64,000 nucleotides of DNA from Asterias rubens (Eukaryota): positions 1,984,001 to 2,048,000 of the forward strand of contig NC_047074.1 in NCBI RefSeq assembly GCF_902459465.1, given 5' to 3'. Below, piece by piece: positions 5,101-64,000 of the stretch; the first letter of the stretch is position 1; the number at the start of each line of letters is the position of its first letter. The translations under genes and the position numbers were made by a program. The notes below the pieces were generated by a model. That model was not told the origin of the DNA and searched no databases. It worked only from the letters and a program-made list of their open reading frames with translations.

Positions 5101-8100
5101 GGGTAGCTACTAGTTACTTCACGGCCGTTTAAAACAGGCAGGGTCGAATTGCCGTGTGATAAAGGCCCGACCCGAAGGCGAGGGCCTTTGTCACCCCCAC
5201 GTGACGTACTCTTCACCAATAGGAATAGCGAAACTGTCTGAGGCATTAAACTATAATACAATTCTAAGCTCTTTTTGACAGAATAAACTATTTTTCGAAC
5301 TGCCTCCCGCTACCGGGCAATCTCAGTGGTCTACCTGTGACACTGCTCTTGAATTACAAAGGTCGTGGGTTCGAATCCCAACCAGAGTGTGTTATTCGTA
5401 TTTTCAATGAGCTCTGGGAAGTACTGAGTATACAAATGTGCTAACACACATCGGTGTACATGGGGTAAAACCCAAATTATTTACAAACTGGGTATGGTGT
5501 TAGGAAATAATATATTACCTGCCGCATCAAGATCAGCTACTGAAATAGCCGCACTGCTGGACATTTCGTTAAACGGATTAACAATCACCCCTTGCCGGTC
5601 AATGGTCTCGTCCTCTATCGGGTCCTCTTTGGGGGCGCCCTCGTACCGTACCACAGCTAGCTCTTGGTTGTAGCGGCAATCGGCGAGTCCTTTCACGCGC
5701 ATCCAGTAGTTCCCGATGGGGGCGTCAGCATGAAGGACAAAATCGTATCTTTCCCCTCCGTAAATGATGAACGCGTCCGTTAAGGTCGGCTTCAGGGGGG
5801 CCCCGTCGCTTGCGATTATAGTCAGGTTGTGGCCGTCCACGGATATCTTGAGGGCGCAATTCGTAATGGCGTTACTGATGACGCGGAATCTATAACGCAT
5901 TCCATGTTTGACTGAGAAAGTCTCACGAGCCGTAAACGCCGTCTGATTGGTGTCCGGATTGACGAATAAGAGTCGTCGACCCTTACCGTTGATCAGCACC
6001 GACTCTGGTTTGTTGCTCCCGCTGTCATGGTGATGAGCGCCGAACTTCACCAACGTCATCTGGTCCAGCCAATCGTGGACCAGCACGACGTGCTCGGGGA
6101 GATCCACATCGTAGAGGGCGTCGTGCCGCTCCCGTTTGTCGGACTGCCGCACCACCAGCGCGCCGAACACCCCGTCCGCCCTCTGCATGCCCGAATGCGA
6201 ATGCCACCAGTGGGTTCCGTACGTAACCGCATCAAACCTATACGTGAAGCTGGTACCCATCGGGATAGGACATTGTGACGTCATAGCCGTGCCGTCCATG
6301 TAGGGTGTTTCAAATTGATGTGGTCCGTGCCAATGGATTGTGGTCCCTTCGGCATAGCTCTTCAGGTGGTTGATAACTTTGACCTCGATCGTGTCCTTTT
6401 CACATACCTAGGAAAACAAAAATTTACCAAGATGGAAGACTTTAAAACGCTAGGTGGCAGCAGACTTACTTGGTAATTTAAATATTCATTGCTTACGTAG
6501 TTCTGAGCAAACGCACAGTACCAAATGATAATGGATTTACCTGATGAGTCTGCTGCCACCTAGCGTCCCAAAAGTCCCCCATTAAAACACTTCCAACGGT
6601 TAAAAGTTTTTAGTTTTGTAGTCACTTAGCGTCCAAAATATCCCCCATTACTTAACTTTCCAAAGGGGTGAAATGATTGATAAAAATTTATTGATTTGAA
6701 CTTGGATTCCGGAACAAAAAAAGTTTAATTAGATTCATTTTCATTACATACAAAAGGCGCCATGTTGGTCCTCCATGTTGAGTTCACCCACCACTGGCTA
6801 TAGTTTGTATAATGCCTGGATAAAGCATGGGAAAATTACCATCATGACACTTTAGATTGACTTCCAAACACTGTATTAGTGAGTTACCTGCACACTTGGA
6901 CCGGGGAACATTCGGTTGACCACAGCGATGGGTCTGGACACGCCGTTGAGCGGAATGCAATCCGGGCGGGCACAGTCGGTCAAGTTAAAGGGGCAGTCAT
7001 AACAAGCCTTGGATAAGGTATGGTACCACTCCAGGGTAAATTCATACTTGCAAACCTTGGGCTGGGCTGGCCACTCACAGGGTCGAAGGCACTCGTGCGA
7101 GAGATCGGATGGTGACAAAGCTAGAAACAGTCCAATACGAAAATAACTGTTAAAACCCTTAACTTTCACCACTAATCACCACTTTCAAAATGCATCTGAG
7201 ATGAAGAACATTATTTTATTATTTCCTTTGTCCCCCCTGTACTTAAAGGGAAGGTACACGTTAGGTAATTGTCAAAGACCAGTCTTCTCACTTGGTGTAT
7301 CTCAAAATAAGCAACATACCCATTAGCCGTGAGAGCTGCAGTAGTCTCGCTGGGGCCAGGCAGTCTCACGAGAATATGCCAGTGTCGCGGGAATCGCGCA
7401 GAATGATAGTCGGATCGCTCTGACCGCGACAGACATGTTACGACTTGTCCAAAATTCTACATTTATACGTGCTTCCCATAACTCTGTCCAAACATGGTTC
7501 AACCTTGGTTGCCAAACACTCAGGTTGTAATGTTTTCAATAGAAAGGTCTATAATAGCCCTGATGCTGATTTGACACCGGGGTTACAAAGGGAAATGACA
7601 CAGACCTTGTAAACACGCTGAAAACACGTTCCTTTAAAGAATAACAACTGGTTTGAACCATTCGTAAACACTGATGTGTGTTCGACACTGTGTACGTAGT
7701 ACCATCCTGCGATTGTGAAACCATAAATCCACATGTACATAAGTCCGATAACACTCAATTATAATTGCCATGTTTGCTTCTTTCTCTGGGTTTGTATGTT
7801 AAAGGCAGTGGACGCTCTAAATAATTATCAGCATAAAACCTCACTTGGTAACGAGTAATGGGGAAAGGTTGTTGGTATAAAACATTGTGAGAAACGGCTC
7901 CCTCTGAAGTGACGTAGTTTTCGAGAAAGAAGTAATTTTCAACGAATTTGATTTAGAGACCTAAAGTTTAAAATTTGAGGTCTCGACATCAAGGATCTGA
8001 AAGCACACAACTTCGTGTGGCAAGGGTATTTTTTATTTTTTTCATTAATTACCCGCAACTCTTTGTGAAATCGACCTTTAGCTCTTTTGTATAACGTGCT

Positions 8101-52400: not shown

Positions 52401-53855
52401 TAAAATCCTGTGTCAATAATAACAACAATACAGAGCAATAAAAACCGGCATTTCTGCTTGACTTCCTGACAGTTTTCTTCAAGACATCCGTTCTTAACAA
52501 TACACAAATCTAGACACAAAGAAACATCTCTAGGCGCACGGGTTTTCCCAATCTTCCAGCAGGGGACTCCACCAGCAACTAGCTCCACCGCGGAGTTGTG
52601 CTGGCACCATCTACTGGCTGATTGGCACAAATGCTACGCTACCTCAGTCTTAAGGTTTTCCAAAAGTGTTTCCAAGCTAAACTGGTAAAGCCCGGTTCAT
52701 ACTTCCTGTGACTGCGAATTTGATACAAATTTTTACATCACAAATTCGATGAAGTGTGTTCAACTCCTTTGAAACATTTTACTGGGAAAACAGCCATGTG
52801 ATGTCAAAATTTGCTTCACATTCACAATGAGAAAAACGAATGGGTGTGTACATTTCAATTAGGAATCTGCGCATCAGTCATAAGGTCAATCTCAATGCAT
52901 GAATTCAAACGTTTTGGGGTGAAAAAATTATCCAAATCAAAACTTTGAAAGGAATCTTTGTTCAAAATAGTTTTTAATCTCAAAAGCTGCAGTGCTTCTT
53001 ACCAGTAAGTTTGTAATTTTGTTCATAGTATTTACCAATCTATTACCATGTATTACCCTACCTTTGATAACTTTGGAAGACGCTGTTTTCGTTGTTTACA
53101 AAACACATGTTTATGTTTCCTTGCCAACAGACCGCAAGTCAAAGTCTCACGACAAGAAGAAGAAAAAGAAGAAGCACAAGAAGAACCCCTCGAAGCAAGT
53201 GGACAGTTCCGACTCGAATTCCGATCACACGGATCAGGGCCAGGGTTCACCAGTACCGATACGCGTCAAGCAAGAGGTCGATCGTGGTTATGAGGCACAA
53301 CAACAGAAGAAGAGACCGATCCAGCATGACGACAGACACTTCAGAGATGAGATGCAACAGAGAGAAGATGAGGAGCGCCAAGGTAGAAGGACTGAGGGCT
53401 CACAAGGCAAACACAGACAAGATGACAGGGGTCGATTCCAAGACTCCAGCATCGCTGAGGGACGGGGAGATAGATGGAATGAGAAAAACTCTGATAAAAG
53501 AGAAACTCAAAAGTATCACGGAGGAAGAGTTCGTGATCAAGGAAGCGATAGAGAGATTGACAGAGAGAGAAGTCGAAATCGGGAAAGCCGTCAGGAGGAT
53601 GAAACGGATAGAGCAAGGGGTCGACAAAATTCAGACCGGGGTTCCGGTAAACCGTGGGAGGCCAAGCTGGAGATGAGAGGAGAAACTGAAAGAGATAGAT
53701 ACAGAGGTAGCGATGAGACGTACGGAGAACGGCAGAGGGACAAGCGCCAAGACCGGGACAGATCTGATGAAAGACAAGAAAGATACTCTCATCGGGAACC
53801 TGAGAGGAAGTCTTACAAAAGCAGTGGAGCAAGAAGAGACGATTCAAGGCGATAA
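49477..53855 (+). CDS. RBMX2: RNA-binding motif protein X-linked 2 (Snu17/Ist3, RES complex), about 403 aa
   Basis: Exons 49477-49481 (ATGAA|gt), 50251-50421, 50919-51048, 52189-52369, 53131-53855. Translation [101 protein letters not shown], followed by a Lys-rich and an RD/RE-rich tail. Confidence 0.96.
51062..51412. mobile_element. TIR element with long inverted arms in RBMX2 intron 3
   Basis: tgtcaaggcctttgtggct..ggacagcttc..gagccgc..ggagaccaca..gcgagtggc is mirrored at 51320-51412. Confidence 0.7.
51469..51810. mobile_element. Kolobok-like MITE
   Basis: Family consensus, ending in tgtccactgcct|ttaa. Confidence 0.75.
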
Positions 53856-54818
53856 ATGAAATAAACTTTTTATTTTACAATTAAATTCTTGCGTTTTGTT
53901 GAAAAGACATGGATAGGAATAACTCAGATGTGGGCTGGGAGCATCTTCTTTGATGGAACAGGGTAATTTTTCACTTTGCCAAGGGCACTTCCAATGGTAA
54001 TTTGTTTATGTCAGCACTAACTTCCACCGCTGGTTTATATAAGTCATTGTAGTTCTCACTTGTCTAATAAACTTGAAGAATGTCATAACATAGATTTATG
54101 TTTTTGTCAATAAAATGTGTATTGGTTCCTATATCTCGGTGCCATGTGGGTTGTTTTTTCGTTTTCTTTACATCTCTGTACAGCACTACTAGTGGTTTAG
54201 GGTGTACTTTGGTTTTAAAAGTACTAGGTCGTAGTTGATCGGGGAGTAGGCCAACCCTGCCAATATTCAAGATGTGAACAGGAAACTTTCTAGGGGCTGA
54301 ACAACATTAATTTGGAATTGATTCGTTCTTCAACAAAAGTTCATTCTTGTCAATACTGTGAGAATTATAAAGTGTGAGAGTTGTATTTTGGAGTTTTTTT
54401 TGTGGGGGGTGAAAAGCGAATGATAAGTGAGGAAGAAAGACACAATCATCACTGAATGATGAATCGTACAAAGAAATTAGTCACTGTGGTATAACAACCA
54501 CTTAAAAATATTTGGTTGTTTCCCCATCCCAAACATTTTGATTGGCTTCTTTTTAATTGATAAAGAACATATTTTGGAGGTATGCCAGACACGGCTGGAG
54601 ATAATACAAATCAATAATTTTGTTCCGTCTTACCATTAATTGGGCAGAAATCAGATATGTCATTAATAATGTCTAATAGTTTTGGCCCCTAGAAACAAGA
54701 CTTATAATTTGGATGGCCTCTTACTGACTGATGTCGCAATAGTTGTCCATGCGCGGTACCCTGACTGCTGCCAACAAGATTTGTAATGTATACGTGTAAC
54801 ATGTAAAGGCGCCATACT

Positions 54819-54832
54819 ATTCCTTTTTCTCC
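54819..54832 (+). promoter_or_regulatory. Candidate TCT initiator / 5'TOP pyrimidine tract of TCTP paralog 1
   Basis: ttcctttttctcc lies about 70 nt upstream of the ATG. TPT1 mRNAs are known 5'TOP mRNAs in vertebrates. Confidence 0.5.
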
Positions 54833-54898
54833 ATTGAGCTGTTCGGCGTTGGGCCTAAAATATTTGACTGCCAAAAGCAATCCGAAGAATCCTCCAAA

Positions 54899-57800
54899 AT
54901 GATCATTTTCAAGGATAAGAATTCCGGTAAATATGTTTCTTTGATATGTAATTATTTTATCTTACTGTTTGTTAAGAAAAAAAATTAAGTATTTTTTGTC
55001 TAAAAACGGCATTTAAAAATTAAATATACTGACTGTCATTTTGTGAACTGCACAATGACATCATTATTGTACACAACTTTGTGTTTTTTTATATCCACGG
55101 ATGATAGTAATGTGTCAGCTTTCGGAAATCCTTTAGGAGTAAATTAAAGAAAGACTTCCGTATCCTGCCCTGCCACAACTTGTTCACTTACTTTTACAAA
55201 ATATATCTCATTTTTTGAGTCGGTTACTTTTTAGTTGGATAAGATTACGAATAAAGAAATTGAAAAAGGATGCGGACATTTTTTCCGAAATCTTTCAGAG
55301 ATTCAATGAGCTGCTGTTCCTTGCTCTATGGTGTGAGAGATGAGTCTTAAACTTTGATTTTTTATATTAATATGTAAAAGCAAAAACAGTTTCCCTCATT
55401 TTAAAACCTTGTTTTGATTAAATTACACTTTAACGAAGTAAGGTAAGGCTAAGCAGCTAAGGGAAACATCATGTCCGTTATTGTAATTATATAAAATATT
55501 CCATCCATATTTCACACTCGCCACATCGTCCAGTCACGATGTCCGTCATTCAGCATGCTTACAAATACAAGTTACAACAGCAGCGCTGCTGCACAACCTT
55601 GTAACACCCCCCCCCCCCCCTTTCGGATTTAACCATTTCATGAATCATAAAATGGTTTATCCAACTCGGCCGCGGCTCATCTGTTCCTCATCAACTGTCC
55701 TGGTACCCGTGGGTACAGCGTTGGTGACCAACAAAATATAAAGCAAGAATTCCAAAAACTTACGATAAAAACTACAGAAAAATAACAGTAAGTATCGAGA
55801 AGAAAATTTAATATTTGTTATTGTAACTCAACAAAAAAAAAGCAATCCTATGTCTTAATTAAAGGCAGTGGACACTTTTGGTAATTACTGAAAATAATTA
55901 TTGTCATGAAACCTTTCTTGATTGCGAGTAATGGGGAGAGGTTGATAGTATTATAAAACATTGTGAGAAACAGCTCCCTCTGAAGTGACATAGTTTACGA
56001 GAAGGAAGTAATTTACCACGAATTTGATTTCGAGACCTCAAGTTTAGAATTTGAGGTCTCACAATCAACCATCTAAACGCACACAACTTCGTGTGACAAG
56101 GGTGTTTTTTTTCTTTCATTATACTCTCGCAACTTAGATGACTGATTGAGCTTAAATTTTCACAGGTTTGTTATTTTATGCATATGTTGAGATACACCAA
56201 CTGTGAAGTCTAGTCTTTGACAATTACCAATAGTGTCCACTGCCTTTAAAGTATATTAAGTGGAGAAAGTTTTGGTTGCGTGGTACAAATGCAACTGGAG
56301 TTATTGATCATTGATGGCAAACGACTGTAAAATTTTCATCTATCAACAACGATTTTTGAAAACGTACAACTTTATAAGGGGGCCAAAAATGTTGGCCCCC
56401 CCTAAATAGTTTCTAGAAGTAGCATAGCAGCAGCTGTGTGGCCAACACTCTGAATCCTTGGCCACGCCCGTCTGGATTGTCTTTTGCACATAATTGTTCC
56501 TCAGGCTCTGTCCTTTCCCATGGCTCAATTTTATGGCTCTGCTTCATCACCATTCTCGGCCAAAAGATTGCCTATTACAGTAACAAGCACAGGTTACGCA
56601 CTATCAAAAGTTTCCTGCTAACCCAGTGAAACACACTTGATGCATAAGGTGAAATTTTCTGCTTCCAGGAGCACCGATTCTTTGCTTATGTTACGTTCAG
56701 CAGAGCCATGAAATCAGGCCCTTGACTTGCATTGTTAGTATTACATAATAGTATTAGGCTGAAAATGGTGATGGTAAGCACAGTAAGTGCCCACTTTTTT
56801 TTTTTTTTTTTTTTTTTCTCAAAAAGCCTTTATGCTCACAATTTTGCTAAGACCAAGTGTTTGTTTTGTTTACCAAACAGGTGCGGAGATGTTTACTGAT
56901 GCAACCAAGTACACATTGGTGGATGATGTTGTGTACGAAGTTGAAGGAAAGGTGAGGGTCATTTTTATTTCAGCCAGATTTTTACCGTTTTGTGCCCATA
57001 GCAGAGAAAGAGCCACAATCTTTTGGTTTGAAAATACTCACGACTAGTGACAAATTCTTGACGAATTTAAGCTCAATTAGTCGGATTTCCAATGCTGAAT
57101 TTTTGAAAGGGCAAGGGCACCAAGGCATTTTTCCTTTGTAAAGGTCACCCTGTGACTGACTAAACTGTAAATTTCTACTGGTACTGGAGCATTTCAAGGG
57201 CACCAAGGGCACATACAGGCAATCGCCTTCGTTGCCTTAGTGAAGTAAATAAGCCTGGATATGTATGCTTTATATGTACACCATTATTATTGTTTTTAAA
57301 AGAAAGTGTATTTGTTATCAATGAATTGTTTTACAGATCATAACTGTGAAGGATGACATGAGCAACGTTAACATCGGAGCAAATGAGTCTCAAGAAGAGG
57401 CCTCAGAGGGTCTTGAAGAAGGCATGAAAAGAGGTGTGAATGTTGTTATTTACAGTCGGCTTGAAGAGCTTACAGACTTCGCCAAGTACACCGTTGAACA
57501 GTACATGAAATACATGAAGTCCTACATGAAGACGTGAGTTAGATTTTGTCAAGCGAGGGCACCCAATTTCATGGTTATAATAATATACAGTCGACTCCCG
57601 TTATTACGAGCTCGCATGTTACGAGGTTCCGGTTGATACAAGGTTTTTTGCCGGTACCGTTCGCCCATGCATGTTTCAATGCATTAAAATACTGATTATA
57701 CGAGCACGGTAGTAGCGAGAACACGGTTATAACGAGGTAATTTGGGAGACCCATTACGAGCAAAACATTGTTTAAAACCCTTCTATAACAAGAACAATTC

Positions 57801-60169
57801 AAAAACCAACTAAGGAAATACCTGTACAGCCGGTAAAGTCGATATTTGTGGCTTAAGACACACAATAGAGGTGTTAAGTGGACGCTAGCAACTCTAAATC
57901 CGAAATCGGGAGTCACGAGTCAGCAAGCAAGGTTGTTAATTCCAAACTCCGGACAATGGTGAGATTAGGAAGCTTGCATGGTTCAAACATGAGAAATCTT
58001 AAGAAAAGATACTGATCCACTGAGTTTATAAGCGCATTATAAATTTCCAGAAGAAAAAAACCACCCGCAATTCACAAGCAAAACTAGTTGCATGAGCAAT
58101 ATTATTGAATGCAAAAGCAAGATTTTACCTGGTATCCCACATTGGCAATGAACCATCTAACATGACACAGGTGTTTACCAATGAAAATCAAGATTCTATT
58201 TTTTGTTGCTGCAACGAGTGTATTGCACGTGCACACACATGCATTAGGAATATAACACAGAACAGCACAATCTTCCCTGGTATCTCGCGTTAGCACTGAA
58301 CTACGGCCAAAGTTTTTCACAGCATGTGCAATATGATTGCAGCAGCAAGATTTTCGCTGGTATCTTGCAGCAGCAATGAACCATCCAGCATTAAATAGGT
58401 GGTTACCTATGAAACCAAGACTCTATTTATTGCATTGGCAATAAACTGCCGGCGACCAAAGTTTTGTAGGGGAAACTTCCCAAACAAGAACGCAAGTTAA
58501 AATCTCACCATTTTTTTTCAATCTTGTAAAAAGTAAATTGATTTTAAAATTGAATTTAAAACTAAACTAACAGTTTTATTAGCCTAATTTTGTGCTTGCT
58601 TTTGCAGTACATCACACACTACTCTATGCACACACACACAGTAGTCCATTGCAGCTCCGCCATGCATCTGTGTACACGTGCGGCCACTATGTCATGCACT
58701 TTGTGCATAGTTCAATGAATATTACTGCGATCGGATGTAACAAGGTTCGGATAATACGAGGAAAACGGGCCAGTCCGGCGGACCTCGTATTAACGGGAGT
58801 CGACTGTATTGGTACATGTATGTAGTGCTTTCACACAGTCCGAAGGGGTCTCAAAGCGCTTCCAACATTATTACTCCTGGACACTGGGCCTTAAAGGCAC
58901 TGTACACGTTAGGTTATTGTCAAAGATCAGTCTTCTCACTTGGTGCATCTCAACACTCTTTCAGATGACTAATAAAAGGTTCAGGCCTGAAATCTTTGAA
59001 TACGTTTACTTCAAGGGAGCCATTTCTTGCAATCTTTTATCCTTGCAAGATAGTTGCAAGATAATAATGAAAGAAAAAACAGCCTTGTCACACAAAGTTG
59101 TGGGCTTTCAGATGCTTGATTTTGAGACCTCCAAATCTAATTCTGCAGTGTGACTTGGCTTTTGCGGACATTGAGGATTCTGTGATTCATAGTGGGCTAT
59201 TTAAATGCTGTTCATTATTATGAAATTGGGTTTTAGTTGGCGGTAAAAGAAAAAGCAGTATGTTTCTCTTTTCCCCTGTGGCCTTTGCTCCCTGCTGTGC
59301 AGCAAACAACAAAACAAATAAAAAGCTACATGTACTAGAACTGTGTGTATCAACTTACCATTGATAATGGAGAATAATTCAAATTCGTTCACCAACCTTG
59401 TTTCGACGATATGTTTTGCTCAGAAGGTTGGGCAAAAATTGTGAGACCTGGGCTGTCCTGCTTTTGCCTTTGAGGATTCGGGTAATTTTTTAAAATGTCC
59501 ACAAATTTATATTAAACTTACACAAATGGAAGATATTGATAGCTTTCCTTCAAATACTACTAGGTGCAGTAGGTTTTGAGATTTCAGTAAAACAAATCTT
59601 AAAATAATTTTTGTCTCATGAGACGAAAGCTAGTTTAGCATGTAAAAACTCATTAACCAGTATTATAAATACCATAACTGGTTAATAAATACCATAACTG
59701 GTTAATGAGTTTTTACATGCTAAAACTGAAGAAAATTATTTTTGTGACAGTTTTTTACTTATTTCTTAAAAACTACAGCACCTCAGTAAGGTTTAATGGA
59801 AGCTCTCTGCTATCATTATCTTCAAACTGTGCAAGTATAACAATAATGTGCGGGCATTGTGTTTTGTAGAATAAAGAACAGCATTCTCCTAAAGTCATCC
59901 ACATTTCTTGTAATCGATTATACTGTAGGCTGGCGCTTCCAGAGGACGCCGAGGAGAAAGCTGCCCTCCAGAAGAAGATCTCCGGCTATCTCAACAAAGC
60001 ATTGGGCAAGAAGTGGAAAAATTTAGAGAAGTTTGATCAATTTTACGGCGAGGGTGCTGGAATCGAACCCGAGAAACTCCCCATGGTTGTTCTGTTGAAC
60101 TACAGAGAAGAGGATGACACGCCGTATTTAGTTTACTTCAAGCATGGTCTTATCGAGGAGAAAGTATGA
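54899..60169 (+). CDS. TPT1: Translationally controlled tumor protein (TCTP) homolog, paralog 1, 178 aa
   Basis: Exons 54899-54926 (MIIFKDKNS), 56881-56951 (AEMFTDATKYTLVDDVVYEVEGK), 57337-57533 (IGANESQEE..YMKSYMK), 59929-60169 (FYGE..MVVLLNYREEDDTPYLVYFKHGLIEEKV*). Phases are consistent. Confidence 0.92.
55863..56245. mobile_element. Full-length Kolobok-like MITE with TTAA target duplication
   Basis: TTAA|AGGCAGTGGACAC ... GTGTCCACTGCCT|TTAA, 383 bp. Confidence 0.88.
57588..58806. mobile_element. Non-autonomous Tigger/pogo-like DNA transposon (TA target duplication)
   Basis: TA|CAGTCGACTCCCGTTATTACGAG ... CTCGTATTAACGGGAGTCGACTG|TA: 23-bp TIRs with 1 mismatch. No transposase ORF. Confidence 0.82.
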
Positions 60170-60965
60170 ATAGGTAAGTGTGCAGGCCTTGCTCTTAAAG
60201 GGACTCCTTGCCTTGGTGTCATGCCCTGAGTCGTCCCCCGGCCTCTGCGGCCATGACCTTCGGTGGTTGTTGTACACAAACAGAATCTCAAGTTGAATCA
60301 ACAAAACTTGAACACAATCAAAAGAAATTCCAAGTCATGATTGTGGTGCTTTGGTCATAACTAAATAGAACCTTGTTACTCCTGTACAACTTCAAACTGA
60401 GGAAACAAAAGTAGTTCTTAAAAACTCATATGACTCTGTGACATGTGGATCTGGCAGTTTTTATCTATGAAGAGTGGTTGAAACTGTTGTTATAAAAAGG
60501 ATCTGGTTAGAAAGATGATTGAAAAGTAGAATAATGATCCACACAAGTTTGCCTCTACATTGCGTGGTTTTCTAGTTTACTTTGCAAACTAACACGGTTC
60601 GCCATTTTGTGGAGTCAAAAGTTTGACACGATACTACAAATGCTTTACTATTGAAAGCTGTTGTCCTTTTAACCAAGTAAGTTTTTGTTGCCATAAATTT
60701 TTAAAGTGGTTACCAAAGGTAAACCTTTCCTTTAATTGTGTATAAATTATTGTCTTTTTCAAACAGGACGCTGTAGGATAGACTGGGAATTTATCAACGT
60801 TTTAGAGGGACATCACTGGACTGGGGAACATCGGCAAGTGTGCCAGAATTGTAAAAAGAATTTATTTAGTCCACTTTGTCAAAATGAATCATCATCTCGG
60901 AAACACTTCTGCTGGAGTCGGCTAGTCAAAACAATCAAAAGGCATGTTCTTTTGGAAAGACTTAA

Positions 60966-61120
60966 GCCCGGTTCATACCTCCCGTGTATGCGATACGAAT
61001 TTTGGCGTCACAAATTCGCTACAAATAATTCCCTTGAAATGTGCTCAACTCCTGTAAGACATTCACAAGCCCTTTGACGTCAACATTCAAAATCGCATTC
61101 GCAGGAAGTATGAACCGGGC
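60966..61120. mobile_element. MITE with GCCCGGTTCATAC TIRs, TTAA-flanked
   Basis: ttaa|gcccggttcatac ... gtatgaaccgggc|ttaa. A related left end lies at about 52689. Confidence 0.75.
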
Positions 61121-62097
61121 TTAAGGCAGTGCTAGGTGGCATTGGACTTTCAATAGGTAGATGCGAAGATTCTTTGAAGTGTGGGTTGTGCTCGGAAACT
61201 GAAAGCTTGTTGTGTTTGCTGCCACCTAGTGTCCAAACATCCTCCATCTTTTCTTCACCGGCACAGATTTCCTGGAGAACAGATCTGTTAAACCTCATGC
61301 AATACGAACAAAAGTGTTTAACAGCACTGGACATGTTTGGTAATTGTCAAAGACCAACTTGGTGTTTCCTTATACATGTGCATAGCTTAACATATCTGTG
61401 GAAATTTGGGCTCGATTGGTCATTTTGGGCCATGATCATTATTTCAGACAGAAACTTTGCACTGTAGAATTTCTACACTAAACAGTTTACTAATAAACTT
61501 TGTTGTCATCATTTTGTGTAGTCTCCTTTGTTGCAATTACAATTTTATACATTTTGGCTCACTGTATGAAACAGTTGACTTATGAAAAAAAGTAGTGTTT
61601 TAAACAAAAATTATTTGTTTATTCTGCTGTGTACAGTAAATTAAATTTAACAACCTGTGAATGTACTACTGTTATAAGTATTGCATTTTTTTGCTGAGCA
61701 TCTATCTGATGTATGCTTATCAATTTACTCTTACATGTGGATTTTATCATAACAAGTCAGCACTAGGAACAAAAGATGACGAATCATGACGTCGGTCTGA
61801 AACGGAATAAGAAACTCGGATATTTCTTTAAATTTTACACTTGGAATCCAAGTTTGATTTTAGAAAGGAACAGGACTCGTTTGTGTTGTCATTATGTTGG
61901 CATTATTTCATAACTGGCATTGTTTACTAGCTTTGAAGACTGTAGGGGTTTAACAAAAACAATCACACATATTTATTCTATAATTGTAGAAGTCAAGGGG
62001 AGAATTAAAGAACATTTATTAATTAAAATTGTGTACCGATTCTTTGTTCCTGGTAGTCGGTATTAGGTTTGCGGTGACACCATGGCATATATCTTAA

Positions 62098-62334
62098 AGG
62101 CAGTGGACACTATTGGTAATTACTCAAAATAATTGTTGGCATAAAACCTTTCTTGGTAATGGGGAGAGGTTGATGGTATAAAACATTGTGAGAAACGGCT
62201 CAATTAAATTGGGAATTTAGTAAACATGTTTTAGTTGGTATTTAAATGAATTAATAGCTCTCTGTGGTTGCTCGTTACCAAGTAAGTTGTTGTACTAACA
62301 ATTATTTTGAGTATAATACTTGTTTCCAGTGCCT
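62098..62334. mobile_element. Kolobok-like MITE abutting the TCTP paralog 2 stop codon
   Basis: TTAA (62094-62097)|AGGCAGTGGACAC ... TCCAGTGCCT|TTAA (62335-62338). Confidence 0.82.
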
Positions 62335-63755
62335 TTAATATTTTTCATTATAAAGTCCTTGCTTAATGAACACAAAATACGGCGAGCCGGAGTCCCTGTG
62401 ACCCATAAGGATACACATGCCTTCGTTATCAAACTCATCGTCTTCACCCCAGTACATGAGAAACTTATCCAGGTTCTTCCAGCCTTTGCCCAGTAGTCCA
62501 TCAAAATATCTTTTAAGCTTGAGTTGAAACAAAAGCTTCTCATCAGGATCGTCGAAACGGCCGCTGAGACTGAAGAAGAACAAAAGACAAGACATTAATT
62601 ATATAACATGAATAAATACCCCCAGACAGTTTCGCTATTCCTAATGGAGGAGACCACATCACGTGGGGTGTTTAAACAGTTGATAATGATCAGCTGGAGC
62701 TGTTTATAATCGGTGTTTTCGGATATAATAATGTTAGATGCATACTACGCGCACGAATGCATATCCGAAAACTGCCCCAGTCACAAAAAATAGCAACACA
62801 CGTGCTGAACTCCAGGACGTTGTAAAACGGATAAGTCTAACGGAGTTTCATACTTCATGACGCCTTTTAACTGAAAAAGGCATATGAATGGGAATAAAAG
62901 AATAGTGACTCGTTCTTAAACTGCCGTTTAAAACCATGCACGGCCACGACGAAGTAACGCAGTTTTTGAGAAAGAAGTTACTTCTCACTAAAGATGAATT
63001 GAATAAAGGCATCAAATCAAGGCATCCAATGGCTTTAAATGGAAGAATGGGGATTAATCTGAATGCTTGGTTACTTACTTCTTCAGGTATGCCTTTATCT
63101 GTACCTTCTTGTCATCTACAGGACCCTCCACAAGATTCGAAGTCTCGACAAGGTCAGGCACTACGTCTAAGTCCTCATCAACTTCCGCATCTGCCTTCAA
63201 CAAAGGCACGGATTCCATTCCATTGTCTATGGGCTTCAGAGACATCAAACATAATCACAAAAAGGAAAGGAATTGTTTAGCGTCCTGACTTCTTTAAATA
63301 AAGGAAGGAGGACCGTTCCCACCCGACCCCCTCCCCACTTAAAAAAAAAACTATTAATAATAATAAAATCGCCGCCTGACCTTTTTTTAAGGCAACTTGC
63401 TGGGATACTTTTTTAGATTTTTTTTCTTTTGCGTCAGATCTTTGAAAATCTTTTTTTTTATACCAATAGAAGACAACAGAAGAGGAGGTATTTTAATTCA
63501 AACTGCTGGTCGCCAATATTCATCACTTTTAAAAGAAAAAGACAAACAAGATGCGGCATCAAGAAAGGATGAGGTGGAAGGGACGATCTTCTGGTTCTTA
63601 TTTTAGTTGGCCTAATGAGACAATTATTATATCACTATATTGTCGTACTTATTGTAAATCGAAGCCTTGTAAAATTACCTTATACTTTGCTTCAACCTCG
63701 TACACAATGTCATCCACCAACGTGTACTTGAAGGAATCAGTAAACATCTCATTGC
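62335..63755 (-). CDS. TPT1-like: Divergent TCTP-like paralog 2 (5'-partial; exon 1 not found in the window)
   Basis: Exons (minus): 63755-63679 (NEMFTDSFKYTLVDDIVYEVEAKYK), 63233-63079 (PIDNGMES..IKAYLKK), 62569-62335 (..GKGWKNLDKFLMYWGE..GMCILMGHRDSGSPYFVFIKQGLYNEKY*). Intron phases are the same as in paralog 1. Confidence 0.85.
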
Positions 63756-63804
63756 CTTCACGAAAAGAAAAACATCCAAATCTATTAAGTTTTGTTATCA
63801 TTGA

Positions 63805-64000
63805 AGGCACTGGACACCTTTGGTGATAGATATGAGTATTCGCATTGGTATATATCTCAAGAAAATGCATTGAACCATGTGAAAATTTGAACTAAATTAT
63901 TGGTCGTCGAAGTTGCGAGAGAATATTGAAAGACAGAAGACACTTGTCGTACAACTTGAGTAAAGCCTTCAAAACGCCCATCCATATTTAACACAAAAAC
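63805..64000. mobile_element. Kolobok-like MITE, left part, truncated by the window end
   Basis: aggcactggacacctttggt followed by family-like internal sequence. Confidence 0.6.

What the first reader, a model, noticed from the sequence alone, without database searches (positions are those of the whole stretch)
54899..63755. Two divergent TCTP paralogs in inverted, convergent tandem
TCTP is usually a single-copy, slowly evolving gene. Here two intron-containing copies face each other, with stop codons about 2.2 kb apart. They share intron phases and a GKxWKNLxKF helix that differs from canonical TCTP, and both are clearly diverged from the vertebrate sequence. This suggests a lineage-specific TCTP expansion with possible neofunctionalisation, and more copies may lie beyond 64000.
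Basis: partly seen in the sequence, partly recalled or inferred. Interest (0 to 1): 0.7.

Follow-up and report, generated by a model that had tools for sequence, protein, structure and literature searches.

The report
Two tail-to-tail TCTP genes in starfish
The common starfish carries its normal TCTP gene next to a second, much faster-evolving copy that is still transcribed, spliced and predicted to fold like TCTP but has lost the family's signature loop; both genes are already in the automatic RefSeq annotation, so this is a modest lineage-specific duplication.

Summary
The genome is Asterias rubens. Copy A (54899-60169, +; 178 aa, XP_033637617.1) and copy B (62335-64308, -; 164-aa TCTP core, RefSeq model XP_033637615/6 of 215 aa) are complete four-coding-exon PF00838 genes. 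They are 36% identical, share intron phases 1/0/2, and their stop codons lie 2,165 bp apart. Exon 1 of B sits 281-308 bp past the window end. These are the only two TCTP loci in the 417.6-Mb genome, so no further copies lie beyond 64000.

RNA contigs from four studies show both genes spliced as modelled. A. amurensis has the same convergent pair. The syntenic Acanthaster planci locus has one TCTP only. A and B alone share a 4-5-residue insertion and the GKxWKNLxKF motif, which points to a duplication on the Asterias lineage, although the tree is unresolved.

B keeps a confident TCTP fold (TM 0.84 to human TCTP). It has lost the TCTP1 loop signature and evolves about 6-10 times faster than A. 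Its dN/dS is about 1.2-1.3 on 24 changes, and its coding divergence is not significantly below that of its introns. Its first exon has an in-frame 51-codon upstream extension, which a young MITE interrupts in the reference haplotype.

This is a real, long-lived, fast-evolving paralog. Function is inferred, not shown. Interest is modest.

The parts
54899..54926 (+). Copy A coding exon 1 (MIIFKDKNS + first base of Gly; phase-1 donor GTAAAT)
   Evidence: Sequence reading and splice assembly. The assembled protein equals XP_033637617.1.
56881..56951 (+). Copy A coding exon 2 (71 nt, ends in phase 0)
   Evidence: PF00838 24.9 bits for this piece alone. The 71-bp size matches exon 2 of Acropora TCTP (PMC5793182).
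57337..57533 (+). Copy A coding exon 3 (flexible loop with IGANESQEE, first hairpin helix; ends in phase 2)
   Evidence: PF00838 42.5 bits. RNA contigs carry the end of this exon joined to exon 4 (loose end at L005:29).
59929..60173 (+). Copy A coding exon 4 (CDS to the TGA stop at 60167-60169, plus 4 nt of 3'UTR)
   Evidence: PF00838 33.4 bits. RNA contigs of four runs start exactly at 59929.
60174..60764 (+). Copy A 3'UTR intron (GT..AG), starting 4 nt after the stop codon
   Evidence: Joint L005 271->865 (cut +2), present in contigs of all four runs.
60765..62113 (+). Copy A 3'UTR exon. It is covered at least to 62113, and the contigs break inside the repeat.
   Evidence: RNA contigs X2 records 6, 8 and 9 and X3 records 12 and 13. 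Only 2.1% divergence from A. amurensis against 5.8% in the A introns (p = 1e-8).
62094..62201 (.). Copy of a high-copy interspersed repeat between the two 3' ends
   Evidence: At least 2,354 candidate copies in the genome, the best at 91-96% identity. Extreme summed depth and many chimeric joints in RNA contigs.
62175..62569 (-). Copy B exon 4 (CDS 62335-62569 including the TAA stop; 3'UTR 62175-62334, largely an inverted copy of the same repeat)
   Evidence: PF00838 25.5 bits for this piece. RNA contigs X1 record 4, X2 record 10 and X3 record 18. Repeat similarity is read from the sequence.
63079..63233 (-). Copy B exon 3 (shortened loop without the TCTP1 signature, first hairpin helix; ends in phase 2)
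   Evidence: No Pfam hit on its own. Spliced to exon 4 in X1 record 4 and X2 record 10, and to exon 2 in X5 record 24.
63679..63755 (-). Copy B exon 2 (77 nt, two codons longer than in A; ends in phase 0)
   Evidence: PF00838 22.7 bits. It accounts for positions 551-626 of RNA contig X1 record 4.
63756..64000 (-). Copy B intron 1 (the part inside the window; the intron runs to 64280). Beyond the window lie exon 1 with the TCTP start codon (64281-64308), the in-frame upstream ORF (ATG at 64601), a 140-bp MITE insertion in the reference haplotype (64377-64516), and transcribed sequence up to at least 64727.
   Evidence: Exon 1 found in G000:C14 beyond the window. RNA contig X1 record 4 joins 64280-64376 to 64517-64727. 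MITE anatomy.

Best explanation
This is a tail-to-tail (inverted tandem) duplication of the TCTP gene on the asteroid lineage leading to Asterias.

Copy A is the housekeeping TCTP. It has a conserved protein, a strongly conserved 1.35-kb 3'UTR exon, and abundant transcripts.

Copy B is a long-retained, fast-evolving paralog. It still folds as TCTP, with the beta core and the helical hairpin. It has lost the conserved flexible-loop signature (TCTP1). It is transcribed and correctly spliced. In insertion-free alleles it carries an in-frame 51-codon upstream extension whose AUG is the first one in a strong context.

Shown here:
- the gene models and their splicing
- the copy number
- the arrangement in two Asterias species
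- absence of B at the syntenic Acanthaster locus
- fold retention
- loop loss
- the rate difference between A and B

Inferred:
- B is kept by selection for a TCTP-like scaffold function that does not need the loop.
- The rest of its surface is only weakly constrained or is diversifying.

Not shown:
- what B binds
- where it acts
- whether the extension is translated
For: Gene models and family:
- Both genes have complete open reading frames with GT..AG introns and identical phases.
- PF00838 scores are 129.2 bits for A and 83.8 bits for B, against a cut-off of 24.3.
- Only two TCTP loci exist in the genome.
- RefSeq already carries models for both.

Transcription:
- One 934-nt contig (X1 record 4) carries all four B exons joined at the predicted sites.
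- Partial spliced B contigs occur in X2, and in X5 (exon 3 joined to exon 2). X3 has an exon-4 contig.
- A is spliced in all four runs.

Distribution across species:
- A. amurensis has the same B(+)/A(-) pair between the same neighbours.
- In A. planci the order is RRM gene, one TCTP, then a gene of about 1,600 aa. tblastn finds no B-like sequence in the 7 kb between TCTP and that gene.
- A and B share an insertion and the LGKxWKNLxKF motif. Both are absent from Acanthaster, crinoid, fish, fluke and fungal TCTPs.
- The motif's codons differ at synonymous sites (6 sequences), so recent gene conversion is not the cause.
- B's best non-self BLAST hit is A.

Long retention:
- Synonymous sites between A and B are saturated (70 of 96 differ), yet the B reading frame and splice sites are intact in two species.
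- B keeps 17 of 28 columns that are at least 90% conserved across TCTPs, against about 30% overall identity.

Fold:
- In the AlphaFold model most of the TCTP domain has pLDDT above 90.
- Foldseek's top 22 hits are all TCTP structures. Human 1yz1 gives TM 0.84 and rmsd 2.5 A.

Rate:
- B's tree stem is 1.92 against 0.19 for A, about 10-fold.
- Between A. rubens and A. amurensis the branch lengths are 0.092 against 0.011, and dN is 0.040 against 0.007.
- The long-term and recent rate ratios agree. That argues for a steady fast regime and against a recent collapse.
Against: - Between A. rubens and A. amurensis, B shows dN/dS 1.17 for the TCTP domain and 1.32 overall (20 nonsynonymous against 4 synonymous changes). 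An omega of 0.37 or less is rejected (p = 0.009), and omega = 1 is not rejected.
- B's coding divergence (3.2%) is not significantly below that of its introns (4.9%, p = 0.15).
- Recent replacements do not avoid conserved columns (p = 0.31).
- A. amurensis has one extra A in a homopolymer just before the stop codon. This replaces the last residue and adds 38 residues.
- The A. rubens reference haplotype has a frame-breaking 140-bp MITE in the upstream ORF.
- The contig word depth of B is about 100-fold below that of A in the two single-animal runs. The tool warns that this is a poor measure of expression.
- The tree does not resolve where B branches. AU tests reject none of the placements tried.
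- No B ortholog outside the genus Asterias was found in the databases reachable here.
Confidence: 0.65

Rival explanations
1. Copy B is a duplicate that has recently lost its function and is drifting towards a pseudogene. It is still transcribed and still open only because too little time has passed.
For: - dN/dS is about 1.2-1.3 between the two Asterias species, and coding divergence is not significantly lower than intron divergence.
- A C-terminal frameshift in A. amurensis and a 3-codon indel.
- A polymorphic MITE in the first exon of the A. rubens reference.
- Recent replacements are spread evenly over conserved and variable columns.
- The TCTP1 signature is lost.
Against: - The ratio of B rate to A rate is the same over the long stem (about 10-fold) and over the recent Asterias split (about 6-8-fold). 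There is therefore no sign of a recent change of regime.
- An unconstrained 164-codon frame with three introns would not stay intact over the time needed to saturate synonymous sites against A.
- Fold-critical residues are retained well above background, and the fold is predicted with confidence.
- The TCTP core ORF (from M52) is intact in both species except that the A. amurensis homopolymer change replaces its last residue. That change may be an assembly error, and the MITE lies upstream of the TCTP start codon.
- Only 24 substitutions are available, so the interval on omega is wide.
Confidence: 0.15
2. The duplication is old, dating from before the asteroid radiation or even from an early echinoderm. 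B was lost in Acanthaster and others, and the resemblance of A and B in the GKxWKNLxKF patch comes from convergence or ancient gene conversion.
For: - The maximum-likelihood tree leaves A, B and the Acanthaster group as an unresolved trichotomy (A+B support 64/59).
- AU tests do not reject B outside A + Acanthaster (p = 0.49), or even outside all the echinoderm sequences used (p = 0.50).
- Synonymous sites between A and B are saturated.
Against: - The shared insertion and motif unite A and B to the exclusion of Acanthaster, P0112, P0097, crinoids and outgroups.
- The two genes are adjacent.
- B's best hit is A.
- The syntenic Acanthaster interval has no B remnant.
- No B-type cluster was found outside Asterias in an exhaustive profile search of 1.84 billion representatives.
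Confidence: 0.15
3. Assembly artefact: the second copy is a mis-assembled haplotype or a collapsed or duplicated region.
For: None found.
Against: - The copies are only 36% identical in protein and saturated at synonymous sites.
- The pair is present in an independent assembly of another species.
- Each copy has its own spliced transcripts.
Confidence: 0.01

Closest known systems
Canonical TCTP / TPT1 / HRF / fortilin (Pfam PF00838; human structure 1yz1, S. pombe 1h6q)
   Same: Copy A matches the full profile (129 bits) and keeps 25 of 28 highly conserved columns, including a recognisable loop signature (IGANESQEE). Copy B matches the full profile (83.8 bits). Its model superposes on human TCTP (TM 0.84), with the beta core and the two-helix hairpin.
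   Different: Copy A is itself unusually diverged: 36-38% identical to fish TCTP and 46% to Acanthaster. It has an extra 4-5 residues with a Trp after the hairpin. Copy B lacks the G-x-N core of the TCTP1 loop signature, and its loop is about 10-14 residues shorter. It has changed several residues of the LLNYREDG-TPY region. Its mRNA has an in-frame 51-codon upstream extension.
Lineage-specific TCTP duplicates in other organisms (two TCTP genes in Hydra vulgaris, PMC5793182; from my own knowledge, not checked here: two in Arabidopsis and two tandem genes in Trypanosoma brucei)
   Same: A normally single-copy gene has been duplicated in one lineage, and the copies differ in structure and regulation. 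Hydra TCTP1 also has an intron a few nucleotides after the stop codon, as copy A does here.
   Different: Here the copies are convergent neighbours whose 3' ends run into the same repeat. One copy has lost the loop signature and evolves about 6-10 times faster than the other.
Engineered loop-truncated human TCTP (PDB 6izb)
   Same: It shows that the TCTP core folds without the flexible loop. It is among the Foldseek hits to the copy B model (rank 13, TM 0.80).
   Different: 6izb is a laboratory construct. Copy B is a natural gene with a shortened, acidic, non-signature loop.

Membership tests
TCTP (Pfam PF00838) | Full-length match to the family profile above the curated cut-off (24.3 bits) | tested here: met
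   A scores 129.2 bits (residues 1-173 on profile positions 1-163). B scores 83.8 bits (residues 52-210 on profile positions 1-163). The A. amurensis B scores 76.6 bits.
TCTP (Pfam PF00838) | TCTP fold: beta-tent core plus a helical hairpin | tested here: met
   The B model has mean pLDDT 80.8, with most of the TCTP domain above 90. The Foldseek top 22 hits are all TCTP structures, the best being 1yz1 (E = 3.5e-11, TM 0.84). A was not folded. Its membership rests on sequence.
TCTP (Pfam PF00838) | TCTP1 signature in the flexible loop (I-G-[GA]-N-[AP]-S-[AG]-E-E type; pattern recalled from PROSITE, columns checked on a 52-sequence alignment) | tested here: not met
   Copy B has gaps at the nearly invariant G and N columns and substitutions at the S and E columns. 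Copy A keeps I-G-A-N-E-S-Q-E-E. The 'not met' applies to copy B only. It is a signature, not a requirement of the Pfam family.
TCTP (Pfam PF00838) | Conserved C-terminal block (G-E ... L-L-N-Y-R-E-D-G-x-T-P-Y ... K-x-G-L-x-E-E-K) | tested here: inconclusive
   A keeps it (LLNYREEDDTPY ... KHGLIEEKV). B keeps G-E, L, R, P-Y, K, G-L and K, but has M, H, D, S, S and N at six columns that are at least 80% conserved (ILMGHRDSGSPY ... KQGLYNEKY).
TCTP (Pfam PF00838) | Ancestral metazoan gene structure (first exon of about 9-10 codons ending in phase 1, second exon of about 71 nt) | tested here: met
   In A, exon 1 has 28 coding nt and exon 2 has 71 nt. In B these are 28 nt and 77 nt. Phases are 1/0/2 in both. 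Acropora has 9 codons and a 71-bp exon (PMC5793182).
Processed (retrotransposed) TCTP pseudogene | No introns, a poly-A tract, a disrupted frame | tested here: not met
   B has three coding introns at the parental positions, an intact frame and spliced transcripts.

The most novel reading that the evidence does not exclude
Copy B is a neofunctionalised TCTP made as an N-terminally extended protein. The extension has no acidic residue in its first 32 positions, carries 4-5 basic residues, and is predicted to form a helix over residues 9-28. It resembles a presequence or an amphipathic membrane helix. It would send a loop-less TCTP scaffold to an organelle or membrane. The high dN/dS would then reflect diversifying selection, perhaps in gametes, embryos or larvae. 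In the two marine metatranscriptome runs the B contigs have depths close to those of A, unlike in the two single-animal runs.
Probability: 0.1. Interest if true: 0.55.

Novelty: new member of a known kind. Interest (0 to 1): 0.3.

Why it matters
TCTP is one of the most conserved and most pleiotropic small proteins of eukaryotes. The role of its invariant flexible loop is still argued over. A natural paralog that has kept the fold for a very long time while discarding the loop signature would be a ready-made comparison. Whatever copy B still does, it does without the loop, and partners that bind A but not B would map loop-dependent functions.

For echinoderm biology, where TCTP is used as a regeneration and proliferation marker, the practical point is that Asterias has two TCTP transcripts. 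These should not be merged in expression analyses or orthology tables.

Beyond that, this is an ordinary lineage-specific gene duplication and is already present in the automatic annotation.

Tried and rejected
- **Further copies.** The Pfam model and three exon peptides were searched against the whole genome. Only the two genes were hit.
- **B orthologs outside Asterias, profile search.** An exhaustive profile search of 1.84 billion cluster representatives with the exon 4 alignment gave only the A and B clusters, an A-type exon from an unnamed asteroid-like contig (P0004), and ordinary TCTPs.
- **B orthologs outside Asterias, other searches.** The word-indexed search with the RefSeq B protein gave only A. 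amurensis and a genomic ORF fragment. A metagenome-contig scan gave nothing. These blanks are weak evidence. At B's rate, an ortholog in the species that carries the 87%-identical A (P0100) would be only about 35-40% identical, and most sea-star genomes are not in these collections.
- **Phylogeny.** The ML tree and five AU tests cannot place B. I rely instead on the shared insertion and on synteny.
- **Global MAFFT alignment of introns.** This inflated the mismatch counts to 6-16%. I replaced it with counts on local BLAST alignments, which give 4.9-5.8%.
- **Rfam scan of 54000-64000.** The only hit is a sub-threshold MIR6288 match (32.6 bits against a gathering score of 74) in A intron 3. I treat it as chance.
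- **Transcript 3' ends.** Poly-A signal inspection could not fix them, and the contigs break inside the repeat. I therefore make no claim of antisense overlap.
- **The 140-bp skip as an intron.** I rejected this reading. It has no GT..AG at any of the positions the 8-bp duplication allows, it has terminal inverted repeats, it is absent from genomic ENA contigs and from A. amurensis, and it belongs to a family with near-identical copies.
- **Literature.** No paper in the searchable library describes TCTP paralogs in sea stars.
Full report
**Observation.** Reading the sequence and joining exons at canonical GT..AG sites gives two complete TCTP genes.
- Copy A lies on the + strand. Its coding exons are 54899-54926, 56881-56951, 57337-57533 and 59929-60169, and it encodes 178 aa.
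- Copy B lies on the - strand. Its coding exons inside the window are 63679-63755, 63079-63233 and 62335-62569.
- Exon 1 of B (ATG CTC GTA TTC AAG GAT..., MLVFKDVIT, donor GTAAAT as in A) is at 64281-64308. That is 281-308 bp past the window end. I found it after fetching the flanking DNA.
- The B product from that start codon is 164 aa.
- Both genes have intron phases 1/0/2 at homologous positions.
- The proteins are 36% identical over their full length (E = 9e-31) and share GK(K/G)WKNL(E/D)KF.
- The stop codons are 2,165 bp apart.
- Against Pfam PF00838, the whole proteins score 129.2 bits (A) and 83.8 bits (B), with a cut-off of 24.3.

**Identity of the genome and existing annotation.** Exact look-ups show that the contig (15,244,110 bp) is from Asterias rubens.
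- Copy A is XP_033637617.1.
- Copy B is XP_033637615.1 / XP_033637616.1.
- All three are named 'translationally-controlled tumor protein homolog'.
- The RefSeq B protein is 215 aa because it starts at an upstream in-frame ATG.
- I found no paper in the searchable library that discusses TCTP paralogs in sea stars.

**Copy number.** I searched the whole 417.6-Mb genome with the Pfam model and with exon peptides of A (exons 3 and 4) and B (exon 4). Only these two genes were hit.

**Transcription.** I laid contigs of four public runs from four studies on window positions 59901-65900.
- *Copy A.* Contigs in all four runs start exactly at 59929, preceded by the end of exon 3.
  - All four show a GT..AG joint that removes 60174-60764. 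This is an intron starting 4 nt after the stop codon.
  - It is followed by a 3'UTR exon from 60765 to at least 62113.
- *Copy B.* One 934-nt contig (X1 record 4) runs 62175-62569, 63079-63233, exon 2, 64280-64376 and 64517-64727. It carries every predicted coding junction.
  - X2 record 10 shows exons 4 and 3 joined.
  - X5 record 24 shows exon 3 running on into the first bases of exon 2.
  - X3 has an exon 4 contig.
- Contig word depths for A against B are about 4,700 against 37 (X1) and 685 against 4.8 (X2). In the two marine metatranscriptome runs they are 12.8 against 3.4 and 4.5 against 3.6. The tool warns that these depths cannot rank genes, so I treat this only as a lead.

**The 5' end of B.** The 140 bp that the RNA contig skips (64377-64516) is not an intron.
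- It has terminal inverted repeats and an 8-bp target-site duplication (GGCCGGTC).
- It has no GT..AG at any position the duplication allows.
- It is absent from A. amurensis. It is also absent from genomic ENA contigs whose ORFs (P0099, P0107) read straight from the upstream region through exon 1 into intron 1.
- The 132-bp element has at least 724 candidate copies in the genome, and the best 40 are 98-100% identical.
- It is therefore a young MITE, and the insertion is polymorphic or private to the reference haplotype.

Without the MITE, the first exon is continuous. The first AUG in a strong context (AAAGACATGG, at 64601) opens a frame that runs without a stop into the TCTP frame and adds 51 residues. 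With the MITE, that frame ends after 42 codons and the TCTP start codon lies behind nine upstream AUGs.

The extension has no acidic residue in its first 32 positions and carries 4-5 basic residues. Its maximum 19-residue Kyte-Doolittle hydropathy is 1.3-1.4, and AlphaFold predicts a helix over residues 9-28. Between the two Asterias species it shows 6 nonsynonymous and 1 synonymous change. There is therefore no evidence that it is constrained as coding sequence.

**Comparative evidence.**
- *A. amurensis.* It has the same arrangement: a gene of about 1,600 aa, B, then A in the opposite direction, then an RRM-domain gene. Its A protein differs from A. rubens at 3 of 178 residues. Its B protein is 89-91% identical.
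- *Acanthaster planci.* The same neighbours flank a single TCTP. tblastn with both B proteins finds nothing in the 7 kb downstream, which contains one 235-N gap.
- *Tree.* A maximum-likelihood tree of 23 TCTPs puts A, B and the Acanthaster group in one asteroid-like cluster (80/93) inside an echinoderm cluster (90/94). It does not resolve their order, and A+B has support 64/59. AU tests reject none of five placements.
- *Shared insertion.* The more telling character is a rare change. A (including an 87%-identical relative, P0100) and B share an extra 4-5 residues and the LGKxWKNLxKF motif. Both are absent from Acanthaster, P0112, P0097, two crinoids, fish, flukes and fungi.
- *No gene conversion.* The codons of the motif differ at most synonymous positions (sequences), so recent gene conversion is not the reason.
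- *Nearest relative.* B's best non-self BLAST hit is A.
- *Conclusion on timing.* Together with adjacency, this favours a duplication on the Asterias lineage after its split from the Acanthaster lineage.
- *Intron phases.* The shared phases are an old TCTP feature. Acropora has a 9-codon first exon and a 71-bp second exon (PMC5793182). They do not bear on timing.

**What B has kept and lost.**
- *Fold.* In the AlphaFold model of the 215-aa protein, built on a 52-sequence alignment, most of the TCTP domain has pLDDT above 90. Confidence is low only in the loop (residues 93-103) and in the linker of the extension. The 22 best Foldseek hits in the PDB are all TCTP structures. Human 1yz1 gives TM 0.84 and rmsd 2.5 A, and a loop-truncated human construct (6izb) gives TM 0.80.
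- *Conserved columns.* Of 28 alignment columns conserved in at least 90% of 47 other TCTPs, B keeps 17 and A keeps 25.
- *Where the losses fall.* They cluster in the TCTP1 loop signature, where the G and N are deleted and the S and E positions are changed. A second cluster is in the LLNYREDG-TPY block.

**Rates and selection.**
- A and B are saturated at synonymous sites (70 of 96 differ, nominal dS 2.7) with dN 0.55. The duplication is therefore old relative to the Asterias species split, where dS is 0.02-0.03.
- Between A. rubens and A. amurensis, A has 3 nonsynonymous and 2 synonymous changes (dN 0.007).
- B has 20 nonsynonymous and 4 synonymous changes (dN 0.040, dS 0.031, omega 1.32). For the TCTP domain alone the counts are 14 and 3, with omega 1.17.
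- Binomial tests reject omega of 0.37 or less (p = 0.009) but not omega = 1.
- On local alignments, divergence by class is as follows:

| Sequence class | Divergence | Comparison |
|---|---|---|
| B coding | 3.2% | vs B introns, p = 0.15 |
| B introns | 4.9% | |
| A coding | 0.9% | vs A introns, p = 4e-8 |
| A introns | 5.8% | |
| A 3'UTR exon | 2.1% | vs A introns, p = 1e-8 |

- Replacements between the two B proteins do not avoid conserved columns (p = 0.31).
- A. amurensis also has a 3-codon insertion. It has one extra A in a homopolymer just before the stop codon, which swaps the last residue and adds 38 residues read from a repeat-derived 3'UTR. That could be a real change or an assembly error.

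**Weighing the readings.** The recent data alone fit a gene under little or no constraint. Four points argue against simple decay.
- The ratio of B rate to A rate is the same on the long stems (1.92 against 0.19, about 10-fold) as across the recent split (0.092 against 0.011 in the tree, 0.040 against 0.007 in dN). B has been in the same fast regime throughout.
- A 164-codon frame with three introns would not survive that regime unselected for the time needed to saturate synonymous sites.
- Fold-critical residues are kept far above B's 30% background identity.
- The core frame and all splice sites are intact in both species, and the gene is spliced in four independent data sets.

I therefore rate 'long-lived, fast-evolving, functional paralog with a conserved scaffold and a weakly constrained or diversifying surface' at about 0.65. 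I rate 'recently dead duplicate' at about 0.15 and 'much older duplication with losses elsewhere' at about 0.15. What B does is inference only. It most likely retains whatever TCTP functions depend on the beta core and helical hairpin, and has given up those that need the signature loop.

**Comparison with what is known.** Both genes are members of PF00838 by profile score, and B is also a member by predicted fold. B fails the TCTP1 signature. That signature is a hallmark of canonical TCTP but not a condition of the Pfam family. Lineage-specific TCTP duplicates are documented, for example two genes in Hydra, one with an intron just after the stop codon as in copy A here (PMC5793182). The finding is a new member of a known kind. 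It is already present in the automatic annotation but, as far as I could search, has not been described. My alignment confirms that.

**Limits.**
- All RNA evidence is from assembled contigs, so transcript ends, strand and abundance are not established.
- Only two B sequences exist, so selection tests have little power.

Noticed in passing
Beyond the window end: 64377-64516 (G000:C14:2048377-2048516; L005:4477-4616). A second copy lies at 65610-65741.: A 132-bp MITE with terminal inverted repeats and an 8-bp target-site duplication (a hAT-like footprint). It has at least 724 candidate copies in the genome, and the best 40 are 98-100% identical, so the family was active very recently. This copy interrupts the upstream ORF of copy B in the reference haplotype. 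It is absent from RNA contigs, from ENA genomic contigs and from A. amurensis.
   Followed up: partly
window 62094-62201 (+), an inverted partial copy at about 62215-62335, another in copy A intron 1 at about 55860-56250, and a short piece at about 62951-62983: A high-copy interspersed repeat of about 110 bp, with at least 2,354 candidates at 91-96% identity. It sits exactly where the 3' ends of the two convergent TCTP transcripts meet, and an inverted copy makes up most of the 3'UTR of copy B. It gives summed RNA-contig depths above one million and many chimeric joints, so it is embedded in very many transcripts.
   Followed up: partly
window 60174-62113: Copy A has an intron starting 4 nt after its stop codon and a 1.35-kb 3'UTR exon. 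The exon is 97.9% identical to A. amurensis, while the introns differ by 5.8% (p = 1e-8). The 3'UTR is under strong constraint, which fits the known translational control of TCTP mRNA. No Rfam family matches it.
   Followed up: partly
L008:12196-12324 (A. amurensis copy B, end of the CDS): One extra A in the homopolymer GAAAAAT just before the last codon shifts the frame. The A. amurensis B model ends ...NEKI plus 38 more residues read from the repeat-derived 3'UTR, instead of ...NEKY-stop. This is either a real change or a homopolymer error in the assembly.
   Followed up: partly
L005 (window 59901-65900), runs X3 and X5: Marine metatranscriptome runs contain spliced contigs of both starfish TCTP genes. 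The B depths are close to the A depths (3.4 against 12.8, and 3.6 against 4.5). In the two single-organism runs A exceeds B more than 100-fold. This may hint that B is relatively enriched in planktonic stages or gametes. The depths are too low and too indirect to conclude anything.
   Followed up: no
window 52992-53852 (+): A 287-codon open frame rich in Arg/Asp/Glu/Ser/Lys repeats. It is probably the terminal exon of the RRM-domain gene (about 400 aa) that lies next to TCTP in both A. amurensis and A. planci. It has no Pfam hit of its own.
   Followed up: partly
window 5484-6299 (-): A large exon encoding multicopper oxidase domains (PF00394 at 101 bits, PF07732 at 64 bits). This is an unrelated gene at the far end of the window.
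   Followed up: no
window 59633-59725 (-), inside copy A intron 3: A weak Rfam match to the plant miRNA family MIR6288 (32.6 bits against a gathering score of 74, E = 0.002). It is most likely a chance hairpin or a repeat.
   Followed up: no
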